DNA of 64,000 nt, from assembly GCF_001194135.2 (NCBI RefSeq), contig NC_068993.1, positions 31,624,962 through 31,688,961 of the forward strand. Reading direction: 5' to 3'. The DNA is from Octopus bimaculoides (lineage: Eukaryota). The notes beneath the pieces were generated by a model. That model made no database searches. It was not told the DNA's origin and saw only the letters and a program-made list of their open reading frames with translations. Of the stretch, positions 25,149 through 41,459 are shown in pieces. The position numbers and the translations under genes were made by a program. Each line of letters starts with the position of its first letter. Within the stretch, counting starts at the first letter, position 1.

Positions 25149-28100
25149 CATCATCATCATCATCATCATTTTCATAAGCATCTCCTTTCAATTCTGTTTT
25201 GATTTCAGGTCAGTGAAACGTACAGTATACATTGGTAGGCCATTAAAACATGCACACTAGATTGTTCATTTATAGAGTCATGTGACAGAAAAAAGGGAAG
25301 ACAGAGAGAAAAAGGAGCAAAATAAAAAATAGAAAAGTAAACAAATAAAATAATGGGGGAAAAGGAAAGATAATTTGCACCGACAATGCTCTTCTCAATA
25401 CGTGTGACGTACCAGTTAAGACAATCTTTTGCACTTCCTGCATGGATGGTAAGCCAGGGATCATTCTTAAATAACTTTCAGTTCCATTTTTGATCATTCA
25501 AAGTGCTCCTACAACAACTGGTATTGTAACCGTCTTGAGATGCCATATCTTTTCAGTTTCGATTAGCAGATCTTTATATTTTCTCAGCTTATCAAATTCT
25601 TTTGCTGCCGAGATATTATGGTTACAGAGTATACTCATGTCAATCAATAAATAAACTTTATTGCTTTTGTCTATCACAACAATATCTGGTTTAATGCCTT
25701 GATGGTCCGATCTGTACGTACTGGAAAGTGCCGAAGAATCGTTACATTTTCTCCCTCAGTTACAGCCTCAGGGTGGTGCTTGTACCATTTGTCAGCAGAT
25801 TTGATTTTATAATGCCGACACATTATCCAATATAGATACTGGCCAACTCTGTCATGACTTGATTTATACTCAACAGGTGCTGAAACCTTACATCCACAGA
25901 TTAGGTGGTCGATTGTTTCTATTCTATTGTTGAAGTATCGACACTTTGGGTCTCAACCATTTTTCATCACATTGGCTTGATAGTTCCGAGTCAATAAGTT
26001 CTGATCTTGGGCAACCAAGATAAAGCCTTCACTCTCTAGATTTAGCCCTGAACTCCGTAGCCACTGATGTGTGTACTTCTGGTCTACAACCGCTTGTTTG
26101 CTACAAGCCACATATTTGCCACGCAGTATTTTTTGTTTCCATCTATCAGCTAATTGTTCAAATGCATTTTGCTTTGCTACTGATTTCACCTCCTTTGTAA
26201 CTACAGTTGCTGCACTTCCATCATGCTGTTCAACCTGGGTATTATACATAAACTCACTTGAAAATTTTTTGTTCTCCTTATTCCTACCGTTTAATTTCGA
26301 CTTAAGGATCATTCTCAGTCTGTGCAAGTACTACATCTTAAATTTTTCTCTCATTCCTTTCTCCATCAATTTATCCATTTCCAAAATCCCCACGTACCTA
26401 CAGTCTGTCTCTTCTATCTGCTTCATAACCTCCCCCGACGGTATCGTTAGCCCGTCCATATATTTGATTTTGCCTCTCTTCAAGATTAACACACCACACT
26501 TTCTCAGTCCAAACTCCATTCTGATATCAGCAATGAAGGTATGTGCCGTATCAACGAGGGAACTGACTTGGGCTTCATCTTTACCATAAAGTTTGAGGTC
26601 ATCCATGAATAACAAATGGTTGACTTTTTGTTGGCGGCTTTTGAATATATATCCAGCTTTTGCTTTCCTCAGAATCAGTGTTAGTGGTATCAAGCATAGT
26701 ACAAAGATCAGTGGGGACAGGCAGTCCCCTTGGAAGATACCCCTCCTAATTTCTACTGTCCCTAAGCTTCTTCTGCATGCTGTCAGGTCCGTCCTCCACT
26801 TCGCCATACTTTTTCCAAGGAATCGCTCAACAGTCGATGTAATACCAAATAGGTTCATACATTCCATAATACAAGAATGTGGGATCATATTGTACGCCTT
26901 ACGATAGTAGATCCATGAAATGGCTAGGTTACTTTTCCTCCTCTTGCAGTCTCTATGTACAGTTTTGTCTATCAGGAGTTGATCCTTGGTACTTCTGCAC
27001 CTACGCCTGCAACCCTTCTGCTCATGTGGCAGGACTCCATTCTTTTCTAGATGTTCGTACATTGACTCTGCGAGTATTCCACTCAATAACTTCCACATAA
27101 GTGGCAAACAGGATATCGGCTTGTAATTGTCTACCGTATTGCCTTTTTCGACGTTTTTCAAGCACAGCACTGTTCTACCCAATGTCAACCACTCTGGTGT
27201 TACCTGGTCGGCATTTAACAAGGTGTTGAGTTGCACAGCTATTCGTGCATGACATTCACCNNNNNNNNNNTACTGTTTGTTTCAGTTCTTGCAACCATTC
27301 AGCATCCTTCTTGTGCTTCTTGTCTTTGCTCCAGATGTCACTCCAAAACCTTTGACGTTCAATGTTATCTGGTATCAACTCTTCATCTGTACACTCTCCA
27401 TTTATTTCTTTATAGAATCTCTTCTGATCTACTATGATTAACCTATTCTGGTGGTAACCCTTCATTCTTTGGTCGTATCTTACCATCTTTGCAACGAGGC
27501 GCTCTTTCAGTTCCTCCATCACCACTTTCAGGCCCTTCCTTTCAATATTATACTTCCTTTTCAGCGCCCTGTATTTTTGTTCGCTTTTAAGGTCCTCTTA
27601 CTCTTTTCTCTCTTCGGTCTAACACAGAGATCTCCTTCGGGAGCATGTCTAATCCGGCCTGTATTCTTCTTTTCCGTCATGGATCTTTTCTTTTGTCACT
27701 CTCATTATGTTTCTTATTCTTGACATCAAAGCCCACGTTTTCTGCTACAATAATTGCTGCCATGATCAAATTATTTGTTCTTGTGATGTTTGTTCGTTCT
27801 GATGTATTTCAGAATTTCATTGACATTTTTCGTTTCTTGGTTCAATTTCCATCGATCAACCTCTTTAAGTTTGCAAATAATGTCGCTATCGTTCTCTTGT
27901 AGCCTTGCCTTTATTCTGTCGTAGATTGCCTTTTGTTCATCTGTCATGTCACCATTAGTTTTATTGTCTTCTTTTAGATCATCTATATGTCTCTCATCAG
28001 GTAAACTACCACTGCTCCTTTCCTGTGCTCATCGTTATCTCTGCTGCTATTTTCCAAGACCCGTCTTTTGATAGCTTTGAGCTTCACTTCTGTGAACCAA

Positions 28101-38480: not shown

Positions 38481-38554
38481 ATATGGGCGCTGACACGTGC
38501 ATAATATATACATATATATATATTATCTATAGGGGAAGAATTAAAAAAAAAGAC

Positions 38555-39680
38555 AAATGACGAAGATATGTGGTGTAGACAACAAACAGATGTATTAGTT
38601 TAACGATCAGGAAGTGAAAAATTCTTTAACGTTTCGAGCCTACGCTCTTCCACAGAAAGGAACACAGAAAGAAATAAGGAGAGAAAATAAAGAATGTGTG
38701 GTGGCTAGCGATCTATCATGGCGAATGCCGGACAGAGGGGTCACACAGGAGAACTAGGAAGAAGGGAAGATAATAAAGTAGTGGTGATCCCAAAACGAAT
38801 GTGCGCGTGAGTGCATATAAGAGTGCATATGTGTGCGTGTGGAAAAGGGTTGGTGACCTTGATATGTCCGTGTGTGTATGTGTAGGTGTGTGGATCATGG
38901 TGTGGGCTTGGAAGTGGTCAGTGCTAGTGTGTGCGTGGTGGTGTGATGTGATATGGTGTTGTGAGGTATGGTGTGGTGGTGTGGGGTGTTGTGTGGTGGT
39001 GGTGGTGTTGGGATGTGGGGGAGGCGAGAGTGGGGAAAGCAAGTGAGGCGTGAGGTTACGAGGGAGGGTTGATGATGAAGGGAGAGGGAAAGGGAGAAGG
39101 TTGGTAGGAGTGAAGAGAAGAGAGAAGGAGTGTAGGAGTGATGAGAAGTAGGAGTCGGAGCAAGAGAACTGGGTGGGAGGAAATAGGTGTGAGAGGGAGA
39201 GAGAAGAGGGGAGGAGGGTTAAATTAAGAGGGCTAGAGAGTTGAGCCCATATGGAGCAAAAGTGCGAAGAGAGAAGATTAATCTCTGTTCACGACGAAAA
39301 CGGGAGTCCAGAAGGCCCCTGTGCAAGGACAATCCGAGCACAGGCAGGTGTTGCAAAGAGTGATCGGTAGAACGGAAATGGCACGAGACCGGGCTAGTCA
39401 GCCAAACAGCGTCCCGTTTGCCCGATATATAAAAAAGGGCAGAGAGCGCAGGAGATGCAGTAGTTGACATTGGTAGAAGAGTAGGTGAAGGAGTCGGTGA
39501 TATGATAGGGTCGATGCTGGGTGCCGGTAAAGAGGGTGGTCTTGGAGTGGTACGGGCAAGTGCGGAAGCGTGGGTGGGAGCAGGGCAACGAGCCGGGTTG
39601 GGAGGTTGGGTTAGGGAAGAAGCTGTGGATCAAGAGGTCTCGTGGTTATGGGCTCGTTTGAAGGAAGATAGAGCGGTCGG
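38555..39680 (-). mobile_element. Penelope-like element, 5'-truncated (GIY-YIG domain, 3' region, terminus)
   Basis: FKRAHN / PGSLPCSHPRFRTCPY...DSFTYSSTNVNYCISCALCPFLYIGQTGRCLAD / RREQRLIFSLRTFAPYGLN; 3' part homologous to 6785-7735. Confidence 0.9.
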
Positions 39681-39771
39681 ACTGGAAACTGCGCTTGCGC
39701 GGTGAACTTGAAAGGTTATAATATATAATGATGTGGCACGTGTCTCTAAACTATATGTTAATTGTTATGGC

Positions 39772-39846
39772 GCGGTCAATGATGAGAATTTCGCCTAGCA
39801 AATTATTTTACTTGCTAAATAAAATTCGAAATCTAGGCATGACTGT
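39772..39846 (+). ncRNA. Hammerhead motif, family 2 copy a (mutated core)
   Basis: GCGGTCA ATGATGA GAATTT..TAGCAA..TTGCTA..AAATTC GAAA TCTAG GCA TGACTGT; C3>A and GTC>GCA relative to copy b. Confidence 0.6.
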
Positions 39847-40237
39847 AAAAATAATAACAAGGTAAAAGATTTTATTTTTCATTCCCTTCGAAATTACTCT
39901 TAAATGTGGTTTTGGTCGTTTTGACTGGTTCTTCTAGCGTGTAAAGCTACCTGTTAAAGGTTGCTTTTCCTGGGCTTAAATGTACACTATTTTATATTGA
40001 AAATATGTTGTCAATTGACTTTTTATACGTGTAAGGCCATTGGTAGTGAAATTCCTAAAACCCGCTACCCTACATATTTTACGTATATGATTTTTAGCAT
40101 TTTCAGAAGATTAGTGCGGCATTTTTTCATTTGCTGCTGACTGAAAACTGCGCTTGCGCGGTGAATTTGAAAAATTATAATATATAATGATGAGACACGT
40201 GTTATTTGTCTCTAAATTATATGCTAATTGTTATGGA

Positions 40238-40312
40238 GCAGTCACTGATGAGAATTTCGCCTAGCAAATTATTTTATTAGCTAAATAAAATTCGAAATCT
40301 AGGTCTGACTGT
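40238..40312 (+). ncRNA. Type I hammerhead ribozyme, family 2 copy b (intact canonical core)
   Basis: GCAGTCA CTGATGA GAATTT-(30 nt)-AAATTC GAAA T CTAG GTC TGACTGT: 7-bp stem I, G-C closed stem II, minimal stem III with palindromic CTAG loop, GUC triplet. Confidence 0.85.
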
Positions 40313-40923
40313 AAAAGAATAGTAAGGTAAAAGTTTTTATTTTACATTCCCTTCGAAATTGCTCTTAAATGTGGTTTTGATCGTTTTCATTGCTTCTTCT
40401 AGCGTATAAAAACTATTTAAATGNNNNNNNNNNNNNNNNNNNNNNNNNNNNNNNNNNNNNNNNNNNNNNNNNNNNNNNNNNNNNNNNNNNNNNNNNNNNN
40501 NNNNNNNNNNNNNNNNNNNNNNNNNNNNNNNNNNNNNNNNNNNNNNNNNNNNNNNNNNNNNNNNNNNNNNNNNNNNNNTATATAAACATATATACATGTA
40601 TATATATGTATGTATGTATGTATGTATATGTATATGAAGGATATTTGAACTTTTTTATTATATAAAAATTGTAACACATGTCTTTGAGTACACGCATATA
40701 CACCCGCAGACACTTGTCTCTCTATGCTTGTAAAAATAAACAATTTATAACTGCAGTGAGATATATTTTCCTGAAAATTTTACTGTTGGTCCCAAGGGCT
40801 CGATGGATTTTGACATTAGTATATTTAATTATATCGCATGTAGAGTTAGATTAACACATAAATGAAGTGACTCAGGAAAACAAACTGTGCTATGTCGAAA
40901 CATAGTAATTATATAGCCAGAAT

Positions 40924-41082
<159 letters not shown>

Positions 41083-41459
41083 TAGCTGGCTAATTCGCAA
41101 TTTTACAACCTGAAGGCAGAAATATATATGACACTAATGTGACGAAGGTCACTAATCGGTACTAGTATTGCTAGAAATAAGAGTCAAAACAACTCAAAAG
41201 CCACAGACTCACTATCTTAATGACTGACAAGCTCCCTACAGCAGCAGATATATCCAGATCATCGATTGGTTTTGCATTTTGATGCTTACGCATCATAATG
41301 TTCAGGGGTGGTTCTCACTGCGCCTAAAGCTAAACTCAGTTTGCCATGTCAGCTTATAAGATTTCCGTTGAAATCATGAGCTGATTTCATGAAAGGTGAA
41401 AGTGAGAATTATTCATTCCAATGTAGAGATATCACCTTAATTATATTGTAAAAATAAAA

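What the first reader, a model, noticed from the sequence alone, without database searches (positions are those of the whole stretch)
39680..40423. Retrozyme-like tandem repeat carrying an intact canonical hammerhead ribozyme
Seen: an ORF-less tandem repeat whose second copy contains every conserved hammerhead element. These are CUGAUGA (40245-51), a G-C-closed stem II with an extra TAGC/GCTA helix, GAAA (40294-97), a minimal stem III with a self-complementary CTAG loop, a GUC cleavage triplet (40303-05) and a 7-bp stem I. The first copy keeps the stems but has core mutations. Cleavage-site spacing is 466 nt, and an N-gap directly follows, so more units may be hidden. Known: type I hammerheads in tandem non-coding repeats define metazoan non-LTR retrozymes, which yield monomeric linear and circular RNAs; minimal palindromic stem III motifs can act as dimers. 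Inference: this is an octopus retrozyme-like or non-autonomous PLE-dependent element. It abuts head-to-head the truncated 5' end of a Penelope endonuclease fragment at about 39680, yet does not match that element's own terminus.
Basis: partly seen in the sequence, partly recalled or inferred. Interest (0 to 1): 0.9.

Follow-up and report, generated by a model that had tools for sequence, protein, structure and literature searches.

The report
Decayed hammerhead repeat beside Penelope fragment
A non-coding ~460-base unit, present 1.6 times in tandem, carries one intact and one mutated hammerhead self-cleaving RNA motif and abuts head-to-head a broken Penelope-type retrotransposon; it is most likely an old, inactive copy of a known kind of ribozyme-bearing parasite of Penelope elements.

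Summary
There are 1.6 tandem copies of a 459-466-nt, 32% GC, ORF-less unit: 39680-40138 and 40139-40423, the second cut by a 155-N gap. They are 87.5% identical. Copy 2 has a complete type I hammerhead (40238-40312). Copy 1 has the same helices but a dead core (C3>A, U16.1>C). A motif of this quality is expected about 5e-5 times per window by chance.

On the minus strand a 5'-truncated Penelope-like element (PLE) meets the array head-to-head at about 39680. It consists of a frameshifted GIY-YIG endonuclease plus a 3' UTR, about 38530-39690.

Membership is not secured. No Rfam hammerhead model reaches threshold; the best is RAGATH-1-hammerhead at 13.4 bits against 56.3. Only one HHR is intact. 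No second copy of the unit exists in the window or in any collection I could search. The organism ("octopus") could not be verified.

Best reading: a decayed roughly dimer-length insertion of a non-autonomous, PLE-dependent hammerhead repeat (non-LTR-retrozyme-like). It was possibly laid down together with the inverted PLE fragment in one PLE-style event. This is a new member of a known kind, of moderate to low interest, not 0.9.

The parts
38498..38529 (.). (TA)n-type microsatellite abutting the 3' end of the inverted PLE fragment
   Evidence: TRF row 38504-38531; regex stretch 38498-38525; sequence read. The second copy of this PLE tail (ends about 7765) also abuts a (TATG)n/(TA)n tract.
38530..39218 (-). 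3' untranslated tail (about 690 nt, C/T-rich on the coding strand) of a 5'-truncated Penelope-like element
   Evidence: 72% identical over 39371..38505 to a second copy at 6787-7765(+), E 2e-156. No hammerhead-like motif even with a relaxed descriptor. No similarity to the repeat unit.
39219..39690 (-). Decayed C-terminal part of the PLE ORF. It comprises the ..LSSFKRAHN linker motif, the CX4(C>F)xxC linker, and a GIY-YIG endonuclease (YIGQTGR ... PYGLN, stop at 39221-39219). It has at least two frameshifts and one in-frame stop. It is 5'-truncated at about 39672-39690.
   Evidence: phmmer of 39397-39645(-) against 1.84e9 representatives gave 567 hits at E<=1e-3, best 3.4e-13. Long hits P0038 and P0080 carry RVT_1 plus a C-terminal GIY-YIG. 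tblastn of 150 hits covers 39237-~39690. A profile of the upstream motif aligns iFsqppLiSFKRdkN to VSSPTALSSFKRAHN (39689-39645), i-E 1e-3. Pfam on the fragment alone found nothing.
39680..40138 (+). Repeat unit copy 1 (459 nt, 34% GC, no ORF above 60 aa)
39772..39846 (+). Degenerate hammerhead of copy 1. Stems I and II are kept. The core is broken: AUGAUGA 39779-85 (C3>A) and GCA 39837-39 (U16.1>C, C17>A).
   Evidence: Alignment A1; coordinates. The effect of the C3 and 15.1-16.1 changes on activity rests on established hammerhead mutagenesis knowledge and was not tested here.
40139..40423 (+). Repeat unit copy 2 (285 nt visible, cut by the gap)
   Evidence: 87.5% identical to copy 1 over 273 columns; extra 7 nt at about 40201-40207
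40238..40312 (+). Complete type I hammerhead motif with predicted cleavage 3' of C40305. It comprises stem I 40238-44/40306-12, CUGAUGA 40245-51, stem II 40252-57/40288-93 plus 40262-65/40280-83, GAAA 40294-97, and the helix III segment AUCUAGGU 40297-40304.
   Evidence: (stems I and II are in the MFE fold, z = -2.65)
40424..40578 (.). Assembly gap (155 N) hiding the 3' end of the array
   Evidence: 11 of 17 gaps in this window sit next to TA-type microsatellites
40579..40636 (.). (TA)n/(TATG)n microsatellite immediately right of the gap; possibly the other half of the target microsatellite
   Evidence: This is weak evidence, because gaps here usually border microsatellites.

Best explanation
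The locus is an old, now inactive insertion of a short non-coding hammerhead-bearing retroelement. The unit is about 460 nt and at least 1.6, probably about 2, units are present. It belongs to the kind that depends on Penelope-like elements, that is, a metazoan non-LTR 'retrozyme' or a PLE-terminal-repeat derivative.

Proposed life cycle of the family (inferred from published families, not shown here):
1. A tandem array is transcribed.
2. The type I hammerheads cut 3' of GUC. Helix III is only 3 bp with a 2-nt loop, so two hammerheads probably pair through the self-complementary AUCUAGGU segments and act as a double hammerhead.
3. The ~466-nt monomer, with 5'-OH and 2',3'-cyclic phosphate ends, is circularised by a host tRNA ligase.
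4. A PLE reverse transcriptase copies it for more than one unit length.
5. The PLE GIY-YIG endonuclease integrates the multimeric cDNA, preferentially at (TA)n microsatellites.

At this locus the array meets a 5'-truncated PLE copy of the opposite orientation at about 39680, inside a TA-rich microsatellite. This is the standard PLE insertion layout of an 'inverted 5'-truncated copy next to a direct copy'. I therefore think both halves were laid down by PLE machinery, possibly in one event.

Since then the two units have diverged by 12.5% and copy 1's ribozyme core is dead. This locus could at most be cut once (at C40305) and cannot release a monomer from the visible sequence.

Shown: the repeat, the motif, its improbability by chance, the PLE identity of the neighbour, the orientation and the junction. 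Inferred: catalysis, dimer action, circular RNA, PLE-mediated mobilisation, and co-insertion.
For: - Complete hammerhead core and three helices in copy 2, type I topology. Stems I and II appear in the unconstrained MFE fold.
- Chance expectation is 4.6e-5 per window, or about 1.5e-6 with a self-complementary helix III. The motif lies in the only long-period tandem repeat of the window.
- Unit properties match the published description of metazoan non-LTR retrozymes (150-450-bp repeats, GC <45-50%, no ORF, type I HHR with short palindromic helix III; PMC7229834, PMC4209133). The period is 459-466 nt, GC is 32%, and there are no ORFs. The whole monomer folds better than shuffles (z = -2.6).
- The repeated region starts within about 10 nt of the 5' truncation point of a PLE EN fragment in inverted orientation. 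PLE fragment ends are rare: there are 4 fragments in 59 kb. By my rough estimate an exact head-to-head abutment by chance is about 1e-3.
- 'Inverted 5'-truncated copy adjacent to the direct copy' and microsatellite targeting are described PLE traits (PMC8557442). Both PLE tails in the window end at TA-type microsatellites.
- The double-hammerhead pairing is energetically feasible: -33.2 kcal/mol against -23.8 for two open monomers.
- A 2026 preprint shows that vertebrate retrozymes derive from PLE pLTRs.
Against: - No Rfam hammerhead model reaches threshold. Only RF03152 scores, at 13.4 bits against 56.3.
- Only two copies exist, so there is no real covariation test. The HHR block is no better conserved than its flanks (92% against 89-90%).
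- Only one intact HHR is present, which fails the '>=2 consecutive complete HHRs' criterion.
- No other copy of the unit was found in the window or in any collection reachable here. Family status is therefore unproven.
- The 42-nt stem II arm is atypical.
- The double-hammerhead is less stable than alternative folds (2 x -18.6; cofold -42.7).
- The right end of the array is in a gap, so target-site duplications and true array length are unknown.
- The microsatellite right of the gap is weak evidence, since 11 of 17 gaps border microsatellites.
Confidence: 0.55

Rival explanations
1. It is a solo PLE terminal repeat that was tandemly duplicated in place. The ~460-nt segment is the HHR-bearing pLTR or terminal region of a different PLE family, inserted in + orientation next to the inverted fragment. 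It was later duplicated locally by slippage or unequal crossing-over. There is no independent retrozyme family and no circular RNA cycle.
For: - PLE HHRs reside in pLTRs, and most occur as single motifs from truncated PLEs (PMC4209133).
- The long helix II (6 bp plus extension) is more PLE-like than canonical.
- The 2026 preprint proposes that PLE terminal sequences seed local tandem repeats.
- Four PLE fragments of at least two families lie in this one window.
- Only 1.6 units are visible and no second locus was found.
Against: - The left limit of the repeated region coincides (+/-10 nt) with the PLE 5' truncation point. That is expected for an inserted multimer but would occur only about 4% of the time for a random local duplication of a 460-nt segment (my estimate).
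- The unit has no coding remnant. A profile of the PLE region upstream of EN gives <=0.3 bits in all six frames.
- The unit has no similarity to any PLE piece in the window.
Confidence: 0.27
2. It is a chance hammerhead look-alike. An ordinary AT-rich tandem duplication happens to contain CUGAUGA, GAAA and GUC with complementary flanks, and there is no ribozyme function, past or present.
For: - No Rfam hammerhead hit at threshold.
- No extra conservation of the motif between the copies.
- Only one of two copies has the core.
- In a multi-gigabase genome, about 2 motifs of this stem quality are expected by chance (4.6e-5 per 59 kb), if the first stage scanned everything.
Against: - With the self-complementary helix III, the expectation falls to about 1.5e-6 per window.
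- The motif also sits in the window's only long-period tandem repeat and directly against a PLE end. Both are the known habitats of animal HHRs.
- Copy 1 keeps all three helices with a structure-preserving A-U to G.U change.
Confidence: 0.1
3. It is a C/D-box snoRNA-like gene or retrocopy. CUGAUGA/AUGAUGA would be box C, CUGA (40305-08) box D, and GCAG/CUGU the terminal stem.
For: Weak Rfam matches to several C/D snoRNA models over exactly this 75-nt span: snR60/Z15 16.7 bits, ceN53 14.9, SNORD33 14.3, SNORD56 12.1, and snoR118 16.3 in copy 1. Copy 1 has a consensus box C (AUGAUGA).
Against: - All scores are far below the gathering thresholds (36-50 bits) and have E of about 1-8 on a 91-826-nt search.
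- No copy has both a consensus box C and a box D. Copy 2 has CUGAUGA with CUGA; copy 1 has AUGAUGA with AUGA.
- A 3-nt spacer separates the terminal stem from box C.
- The hammerhead reading explains the additional GAAA, the G-C-closed stem II and the palindromic helix III, none of which a snoRNA needs.
Confidence: 0.03

Closest known systems
Metazoan non-LTR retrozymes (type I HHR tandem repeats; Cervera & de la Pena 2020, PMC7229834), e.g. the 350-390-bp mussel repeats
   Same: Head-to-tail non-coding repeat of a few hundred bp, low GC (32%), and one type I hammerhead per unit. Helix III is short with a palindromic loop, implying dimeric action. The locus coexists with PLEs in the same genome region.
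   Different: Only 1.6 units are visible and only one HHR is intact. The unit (459-466 nt) is at or above the upper end of the published 150-450-bp range. Helix II is a 42-nt extended arm rather than 4 bp plus loop 2. No family, expression or circular RNA has been shown. Rfam hammerhead models do not score it.
PLE-associated minimal hammerheads in pLTRs (Cervera & de la Pena 2014, PMC4209133)
   Same: Physical association with a PLE. Larger-than-usual helix II (6 bp proximal), a G10.1-C11.1 closing pair, palindromic 15.2-16.2/loop 3, a probable dimer requirement, and probably low intrinsic activity.
   Different: Helix I is long (7 bp against 4-5). There is no unpaired nucleotide between A9 and G10.1. 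The repeat does not flank an RT-EN ORF. The neighbouring PLE is inverted, and its own tail is unrelated and lacks an HHR.
PLE composite insertions: an inverted 5'-truncated copy adjacent to the upstream pLTR (Craig et al. 2021, PMC8557442, fig. 2 legend)
   Same: A 5'-truncated PLE copy lies head-to-head with a direct HHR-bearing repeat. The 3' ends lie at TA-type microsatellites. An assembly gap sits at the structure.
   Different: The two arms are not copies of one element: there is no inverted repeat (0 pairs). The direct arm is a non-coding ~460-nt unit in tandem, not pLTR-ORF-pLTR.
Rfam RF03152 RAGATH-1-hammerhead (best-scoring hammerhead covariance model)
   Same: The model aligns stem I, CUGAUGAGA, CGAAA and GUC in register.
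   Different: It scores 13.4 bits against a gathering score of 56.3. The model's 9-bp helix III is replaced by a 2-nt loop, and helix II carries a 37-nt insertion. It is not a member.

Membership tests
Hammerhead ribozyme, type I | Conserved core: C3 U4 G5 A6 N7 G8 A9, G12 A13 A14, A15.1-U16.1 pair, H17 at the cleavage site | tested here: met
   Copy 2 has CUGAUGA 40245-51, GAA-A 40294-97, U40304 and C40305. Copy 1 fails (C3>A, U16.1>C).
Hammerhead ribozyme, type I | Three helices around the core, with helices II and III closed and helix I open; G10.1-C11.1 closes helix II | tested here: met
   Stem I is 7 bp. Stem II is 6 bp plus a 4-bp distal helix. Helix III is 3 bp with a 2-nt loop, unstable as a monomer. 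Stems I and II are in the MFE fold.
Hammerhead ribozyme, type I | Recognition by curated covariance models (Rfam Hammerhead_1/3/II/HH9/HH10 and variants) at gathering score | tested here: not met
   No match at gathering score over the whole window. No hammerhead match at E<=10 on 826 nt. Only RF03152 at 13.4 bits against 56.3 on 91 nt.
Hammerhead ribozyme, type I | Occurrence beyond chance | tested here: met
   0 of 2000 shuffles reach the observed quality. Expected 4.6e-5 per window, or about 1.5e-6 with a self-complementary helix III.
Hammerhead ribozyme, type I | Covariation in helices across homologues | tested here: inconclusive
   Only two copies are available. There is one A-U to G.U change in stem I, and the distal stem II is 4 bp against 6 bp. 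The HHR block is 92% identical against 89-90% for the flanks.
Hammerhead ribozyme, type I | Site-specific self-cleavage | not testable with these tools
   Needs in vitro transcription of monomer and dimer constructs.
Metazoan non-LTR retrozyme | Head-to-tail tandem repeat of about 150-450 bp, low GC, without ORF, LTR, PBS or PPT | tested here: met
   Period 459-466 nt (slightly above the quoted range), GC 0.32, longest ORFs 45-60 aa without relatives.
Metazoan non-LTR retrozyme | [quoted passage not shown] | tested here: not met
   Copy 1's core is mutated. Any third unit is hidden in the gap.
Metazoan non-LTR retrozyme | A dispersed family of such arrays in the genome | tested here: inconclusive
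   No other copy in the 64-kb window. The metagenome pattern scan gave 8 unrelated hits, and the protein-space proxies gave none.
Metazoan non-LTR retrozyme | Expression as monomeric linear and circular RNA | not testable with these tools
   Requires northern blot, divergent RT-PCR or RNA-seq.
Autonomous PLE pLTR | The HHR-bearing repeat flanks, in the same orientation, an RT plus GIY-YIG ORF of the same element | tested here: not met
   No PLE coding signal in any frame of the unit. The only adjacent PLE ORF is inverted, and its tail is unrelated to the unit. The gap leaves a downstream ORF formally possible.
Penelope-like element (the neighbouring fragment) | C-terminal GIY-YIG endonuclease with upstream Cys linker, homologous to proteins that carry a PLE-type RT | tested here: met
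   567 hits, best 3.4e-13. P0038 and P0080 carry RVT_1 plus GIY-YIG. The linker motif SFKR..N and the CX4CxxC region align. Pfam on the decayed fragment alone is negative.
C/D-box snoRNA | Consensus box C (RUGAUGA) and box D (CUGA) brought together by a terminal stem; match to a curated model | tested here: not met
   Rfam snoRNA models score 12-17 bits against gathering scores of 36-50. No copy has both consensus boxes.

The most novel reading that the evidence does not exclude
The head-to-head junction at about 39680 may be a single-event footprint of trans-mobilisation. During one PLE integration at a (TA)n microsatellite, the two 3'-OH ends made by the GIY-YIG endonuclease would have primed reverse transcription of two different templates. 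One was the PLE's own mRNA, giving the inverted, 5'-truncated EN plus 3' UTR arm. The other was a multimeric or circular hammerhead-repeat RNA, giving the direct ~2-unit arm. The two cDNAs would have joined at a patch of up to 10 nt of microhomology (39680-39689, where PLE coding homology and inter-unit homology overlap). If so, this would be direct structural evidence, in an invertebrate, that retrozyme-like RNAs are copied by PLE machinery. Until now that has been argued only from co-occurrence and pLTR phylogeny in vertebrates.
Probability: 0.25. Interest if true: 0.55.

Novelty: new member of a known kind. Interest (0 to 1): 0.33.

Why it matters
Hammerhead ribozymes in animal tandem repeats, and their dependence on Penelope-like elements, are established ideas. 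One more decayed copy changes little. There are two modest points of value.

First, no paper in the searchable library links retrozymes or hammerheads to cephalopods. If the source really is an octopus and the unit proves to be a family, it would extend the known host range. It would also add an HHR variant with an unusually long helix II that curated covariance models miss.

Second, the exact head-to-head junction between a 5'-truncated PLE and a hammerhead array with unrelated termini is what a PLE-mediated trans-mobilisation event should leave behind. A genome-wide census of such junctions would test the 'retrozymes are PLE parasites' model mechanistically rather than only phylogenetically.

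Tried and rejected
- Rfam at gathering score on the whole window, at E<=10 on 826 nt, and at E<=10 on 91 nt: no usable hammerhead hit.
- TRF: does not report the repeat, because 1.6 copies is too few. The repeat finder and blastn do report it.
- External copies of the unit:
  - A gapped pattern TGATGAGAATTT-N24-36-AAATTCGAAA in metagenome contigs gave 8 hits, all unrelated by inspection.
  - A chimeric query of all stop-free translations of the unit against 5.8e9 proteins gave none.
  - Exact look-ups of two window ORFs were not on record.
- PLE route to same-species loci:
  - The spliced EN query found nothing in the word-indexed search.
  - Cluster look-up of the top HMMER hits was uninformative; one is from Lepisosteus.
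  - An RT peptide from 57.7 kb gave a single distant hit on an unrelated contig, L009, with no HHR and no unit similarity.
  - Conclusion: the source genome is not in the reachable collections.
- Is the unit an antisense PLE ORF? Low-stringency tblastn gave suggestive colinear scraps (LTY..NF, IIDRAI, FHxxxxYT). I rejected this hypothesis because a profile of the PLE region upstream of EN scores <=0.3 bits in all six frames. The in-window RT copy at 57.7 kb also shows no DNA similarity to the unit.
- HHR in the PLE fragment's own tail: none, even with a relaxed descriptor.
- tRNA-derived SINE head: no tRNA-like sequence.
- The right-flank microsatellite as evidence of a single insertion: downgraded, because 11 of 17 gaps border microsatellites.
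- Literature searches for cephalopod retrozymes or HHRs: nothing relevant.
Full report
**Observation**

Reading 39000-41400 and comparing the region with itself confirms a direct tandem repeat. Copy 1 is 39680-40138 (459 nt). Copy 2 is 40139-40423 (285 nt) and is cut by a 155-N gap at 40424-40578. The copies are 87.5% identical over 273 aligned columns, and copy 2 has 7 extra bases near 40201-40207. Block spacings are 459, 465 and 466 nt. TRF does not list the repeat because there are fewer than two copies. The unit has 32-34% GC. Its longest ORFs are 45-60 aa. Nothing else in the 64-kb window resembles it.

**The hammerhead**

- Stem I is GCAGUCA 40238-44 paired with UGACUGU 40306-12 (7 bp, one G.U).
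- The core box CUGAUGA is at 40245-51.
- Stem II is GAAUUU 40252-57 paired with AAAUUC 40288-93. It is closed by G10.1-C11.1 and has a distal UAGC/GCUA helix at 40262-65/40280-83.
- GAAA is at 40294-97.
- The helix III segment is A-UCUAGG-U.
- The cleavage triplet GUC is at 40303-05.

Helix I is open and helices II and III are closed, so this is type I topology. An unconstrained fold of the 78-nt motif keeps stems I and II (-18.6 kcal/mol, z = -2.65). Helix III would be 3 bp with a 2-nt loop, so it cannot form in a monomer.

The segment AUCUAGGU is fully self-complementary when G.U pairs are allowed. A double-hammerhead built from two copies evaluates to -33.2 kcal/mol, against -23.8 for two open monomers. 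It is less stable than competing folds (2 x -18.6; cofold -42.7). Dimer action is therefore feasible but not demonstrated.

Copy 1 has AUGAUGA (C3>A) and GCA instead of GUC (U16.1>C, C17>A), while its helices are retained (A-U becomes G.U in stem I). From established hammerhead mutagenesis (my knowledge, not tested here), C3 and the A15.1-U16.1 pair are essential, so copy 1 should be inactive.

**Chance**

My descriptor finds only this one site in the window. That holds even when it is relaxed to stems of 3-4 bp, Y at position 3, any base at position 7, and an optional bulge. Two thousand dinucleotide-preserving shuffles of the window gave 42 relaxed hits, 7 stricter hits and none of the observed quality.

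A conditional Markov-1 simulation (6 million CTGATGA contexts) gives 4.6e-5 expected motifs per window with stem I >=7 bp and stem II >=6 bp. It gives about 1.5e-6 if the helix III segment must also be self-complementary (a single simulated event, so rough). In a genome of a few gigabases a few look-alikes of the first kind would exist. One that also lies in a long-period tandem repeat and against a PLE end is very unlikely to be accidental.

**What argues against**

Rfam does not recognise the motif:
- Nothing reaches gathering score in the window.
- No hammerhead family appears at E<=10 on 826 nt.
- On the 91-nt slice only RF03152 (RAGATH-1-hammerhead) appears, at 13.4 bits against a gathering score of 56.3. 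It aligns stem I, CUGAUGAGA, CGAAA and GUC in register but penalises the 37-nt insertion in helix II and the missing helix III.

The same search gives equally weak C/D-box snoRNA matches (12-17 bits against 36-50), because CUGAUGA resembles box C. No copy has both consensus boxes, so I give that rival about 3%. The hammerhead block is no better conserved between the two copies than its flanks (92% against 89-90%). With two sequences there is no real covariation test.

**The neighbour**

On the minus strand, 39645-39397 translates to ..RDLLIHSFFPNPTSQPGSLPCSHPRFRTCPY...NVNYCISCALCPFLYIGQTGR. A frameshifted continuation ends ..RTFAPYGLNSLALLI* at 39219. Pfam and the word-indexed protein search see nothing in this decayed fragment.

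An exhaustive phmmer search against 1.84 billion representatives gives 567 hits at E<=1e-3, the best at 3.4e-13. The long hits (P0038, 891 aa; P0080, 707 aa) carry RVT_1 followed by a C-terminal GIY-YIG domain. This is the canonical PLE architecture. The CX4CxxC linker that Craig et al. associate with Neptune/Nematis-type elements is present in the homologues. In this copy its second Cys is an F.

A profile of the motif just upstream (iFsqppLiSFKRdkN) aligns to VSSPTALSSFKRAHN in another frame, 39689-39645 (i-E 1e-3). The coding remnant therefore runs with frameshifts from about 39672-39689 down to 39219.

The 3' UTR continues to about 38530. It is 72% identical over 39371-38505 to a second copy of the same tail at 6787-7765(+). 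Both tails end at (TA)n/(TATG)n microsatellites, consistent with the microsatellite bias reported for PLEs. Neither tail has any hammerhead-like motif or any similarity to the repeat unit.

**Is the unit itself PLE coding sequence read backwards?**

Low-stringency tblastn produced tempting colinear scraps on the minus strand of the unit. I tested this hypothesis and rejected it. A profile of about 220 residues upstream of the EN domain, built from 17 long PLE proteins plus the window's own RT copy at 57691-58146, scores no more than 0.3 bits in any of the six frames of 39693-40423. That RT copy also has no DNA similarity to the unit.

PLE homology and inter-unit homology overlap by at most about 10 nt (39680-39689). 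In that patch copy 2 even reads VFSQ, like the PLE consensus IFSQ. I regard this as possible microhomology at a template switch, and it is unproven.

**Architecture and mechanism**

Reading the plus strand, the order is:
1. a TA microsatellite;
2. the PLE tail and EN in reverse orientation, 5'-truncated at about 39680;
3. the hammerhead unit in forward orientation, at least 1.6 copies;
4. the gap;
5. a TA/TATG microsatellite.

Craig et al. [quoted passage not shown] They also note that such structures break short-read assemblies. Here, however, the two arms are different sequences; there is no inverted repeat.

The left limit of the repeated region coincides with the PLE truncation point. That is expected if a multimeric cDNA was inserted. 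A random local duplication would show it only about 4% of the time. Four PLE fragments lie in this window, so an exact head-to-head abutment by chance is of order 1e-3 (my estimate).

The microsatellite right of the gap adds little, because 11 of 17 gaps in the window border such tracts.

I therefore favour this reading: a non-autonomous hammerhead repeat, copied for more than one unit length and integrated by PLE machinery, possibly in the same event as the inverted PLE arm. It has since decayed: the units differ by 12.5% and one core is dead.

The life cycle I propose is transcription, dimeric self-cleavage, ligase-mediated circularisation, rolling-circle reverse transcription and GIY-YIG integration. 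It is taken from published retrozyme and PLE work and is inferred, not shown, for this sequence. The 466-nt monomer is somewhat more structured than shuffles (z = -2.6), in line with the 'highly self-paired' retrozyme RNAs, but the effect is weak.

**Comparison and membership**

The locus works like a metazoan non-LTR retrozyme or a PLE-type hammerhead repeat. Membership of the active retrozyme class is not established:
- the '>=2 consecutive complete HHRs' criterion is not met;
- family status could not be tested;
- curated hammerhead models fail.

The ribozyme blends traits. Helices I and III are like canonical metazoan type I HHRs. The proximal helix II is long, as in PLE min-HHRs, but without their bulged nucleotide after A9. 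A further distal arm makes helix II 42 nt in total.

**Limits**

I could not obtain any related sequence from elsewhere:
- the metagenome pattern scan returned only unrelated hits;
- protein-space proxies returned nothing;
- exact look-ups of window ORFs were not on record.

The closest PLE protein (P0006, from a Logan contig) is only about 52% identical, and its origin is not given. The attribution to an octopus is therefore unverified. No paper in the library links hammerheads or retrozymes to cephalopods.

**Verdict**

The locus is a new, decayed member of a known kind, of modest interest. The most interesting open possibility is that the junction records a PLE-mediated trans-mobilisation event.

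Noticed in passing
window 6787-7765 (+): A second copy of the same PLE's EN C-terminus and ~700-nt C/T-rich 3' tail. It is 72% identical to 39371-38505(-), starts right after an N gap (6030-6784) and ends at a (TATG)n microsatellite. It shows that this PLE family is old and repeatedly targets TA-type microsatellites.
   Followed up: partly
window 57691-58146 (+): A well-preserved PLE reverse-transcriptase C-terminal region (tblastn E 1.5e-31 to P0007, a Lepisosteus protein; two in-frame stops). It is preceded by an N gap (57365-57615) and breaks off at about 58146. Its downstream low-complexity ORF resembles the N-terminal part of Logan protein P0006, whose C-terminal part matches the EN fragment at 39.4-39.7 kb. 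It may therefore belong to the same PLE family.
   Followed up: partly
window 61184-61637 (-): A further, more divergent PLE fragment (RT-EN linker region, 31-38% identity to P0007 residues 131-283). This makes four PLE pieces in 64 kb, yet only one hammerhead motif in the whole window.
   Followed up: no
window 26331-27236 (-): A 301-aa open reading frame with a clear RVT_1 reverse-transcriptase domain (Pfam E 8e-20). It is a non-PLE (LINE-like) retroelement fragment abutting a 10-N gap.
   Followed up: partly
window 39680-39689 and 40137-40148: At the unit boundary the minus strand of copy 2 reads AVFSQQQM, close to the PLE consensus IFSQPPL. At the PLE/copy-1 junction it reads AVSSPTAL, continuing into ..SSFKRAHN. 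So about 10-12 nt are shared between the PLE coding sequence and the start of the repeat unit. This could be microhomology at a template switch or coincidence.
   Followed up: partly
whole window (17 N runs, 5179 N): 11 of 17 assembly gaps are flanked within 60 nt by TA-type microsatellites, which cover about 3.6% of the window in 51 tracts. Gaps therefore mostly mark unresolved microsatellites, and their stated sizes should not be trusted.
   Followed up: yes
window 40924-41077: A long compound (GACA)n-(GATA)n microsatellite (38.5 copies, 94% matches), about 350 nt downstream of the gap.
   Followed up: no
L009 13992-16601 (ENA contig ctg131389, unrelated organism): The only word-indexed relative of the window's PLE RT peptide lies on a 366-kb eukaryote-like contig next to an 869-aa DNA_pol_B_2 gene, suggestive of a Maverick/Polinton-type element. 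It is not related to the finding.
   Followed up: no
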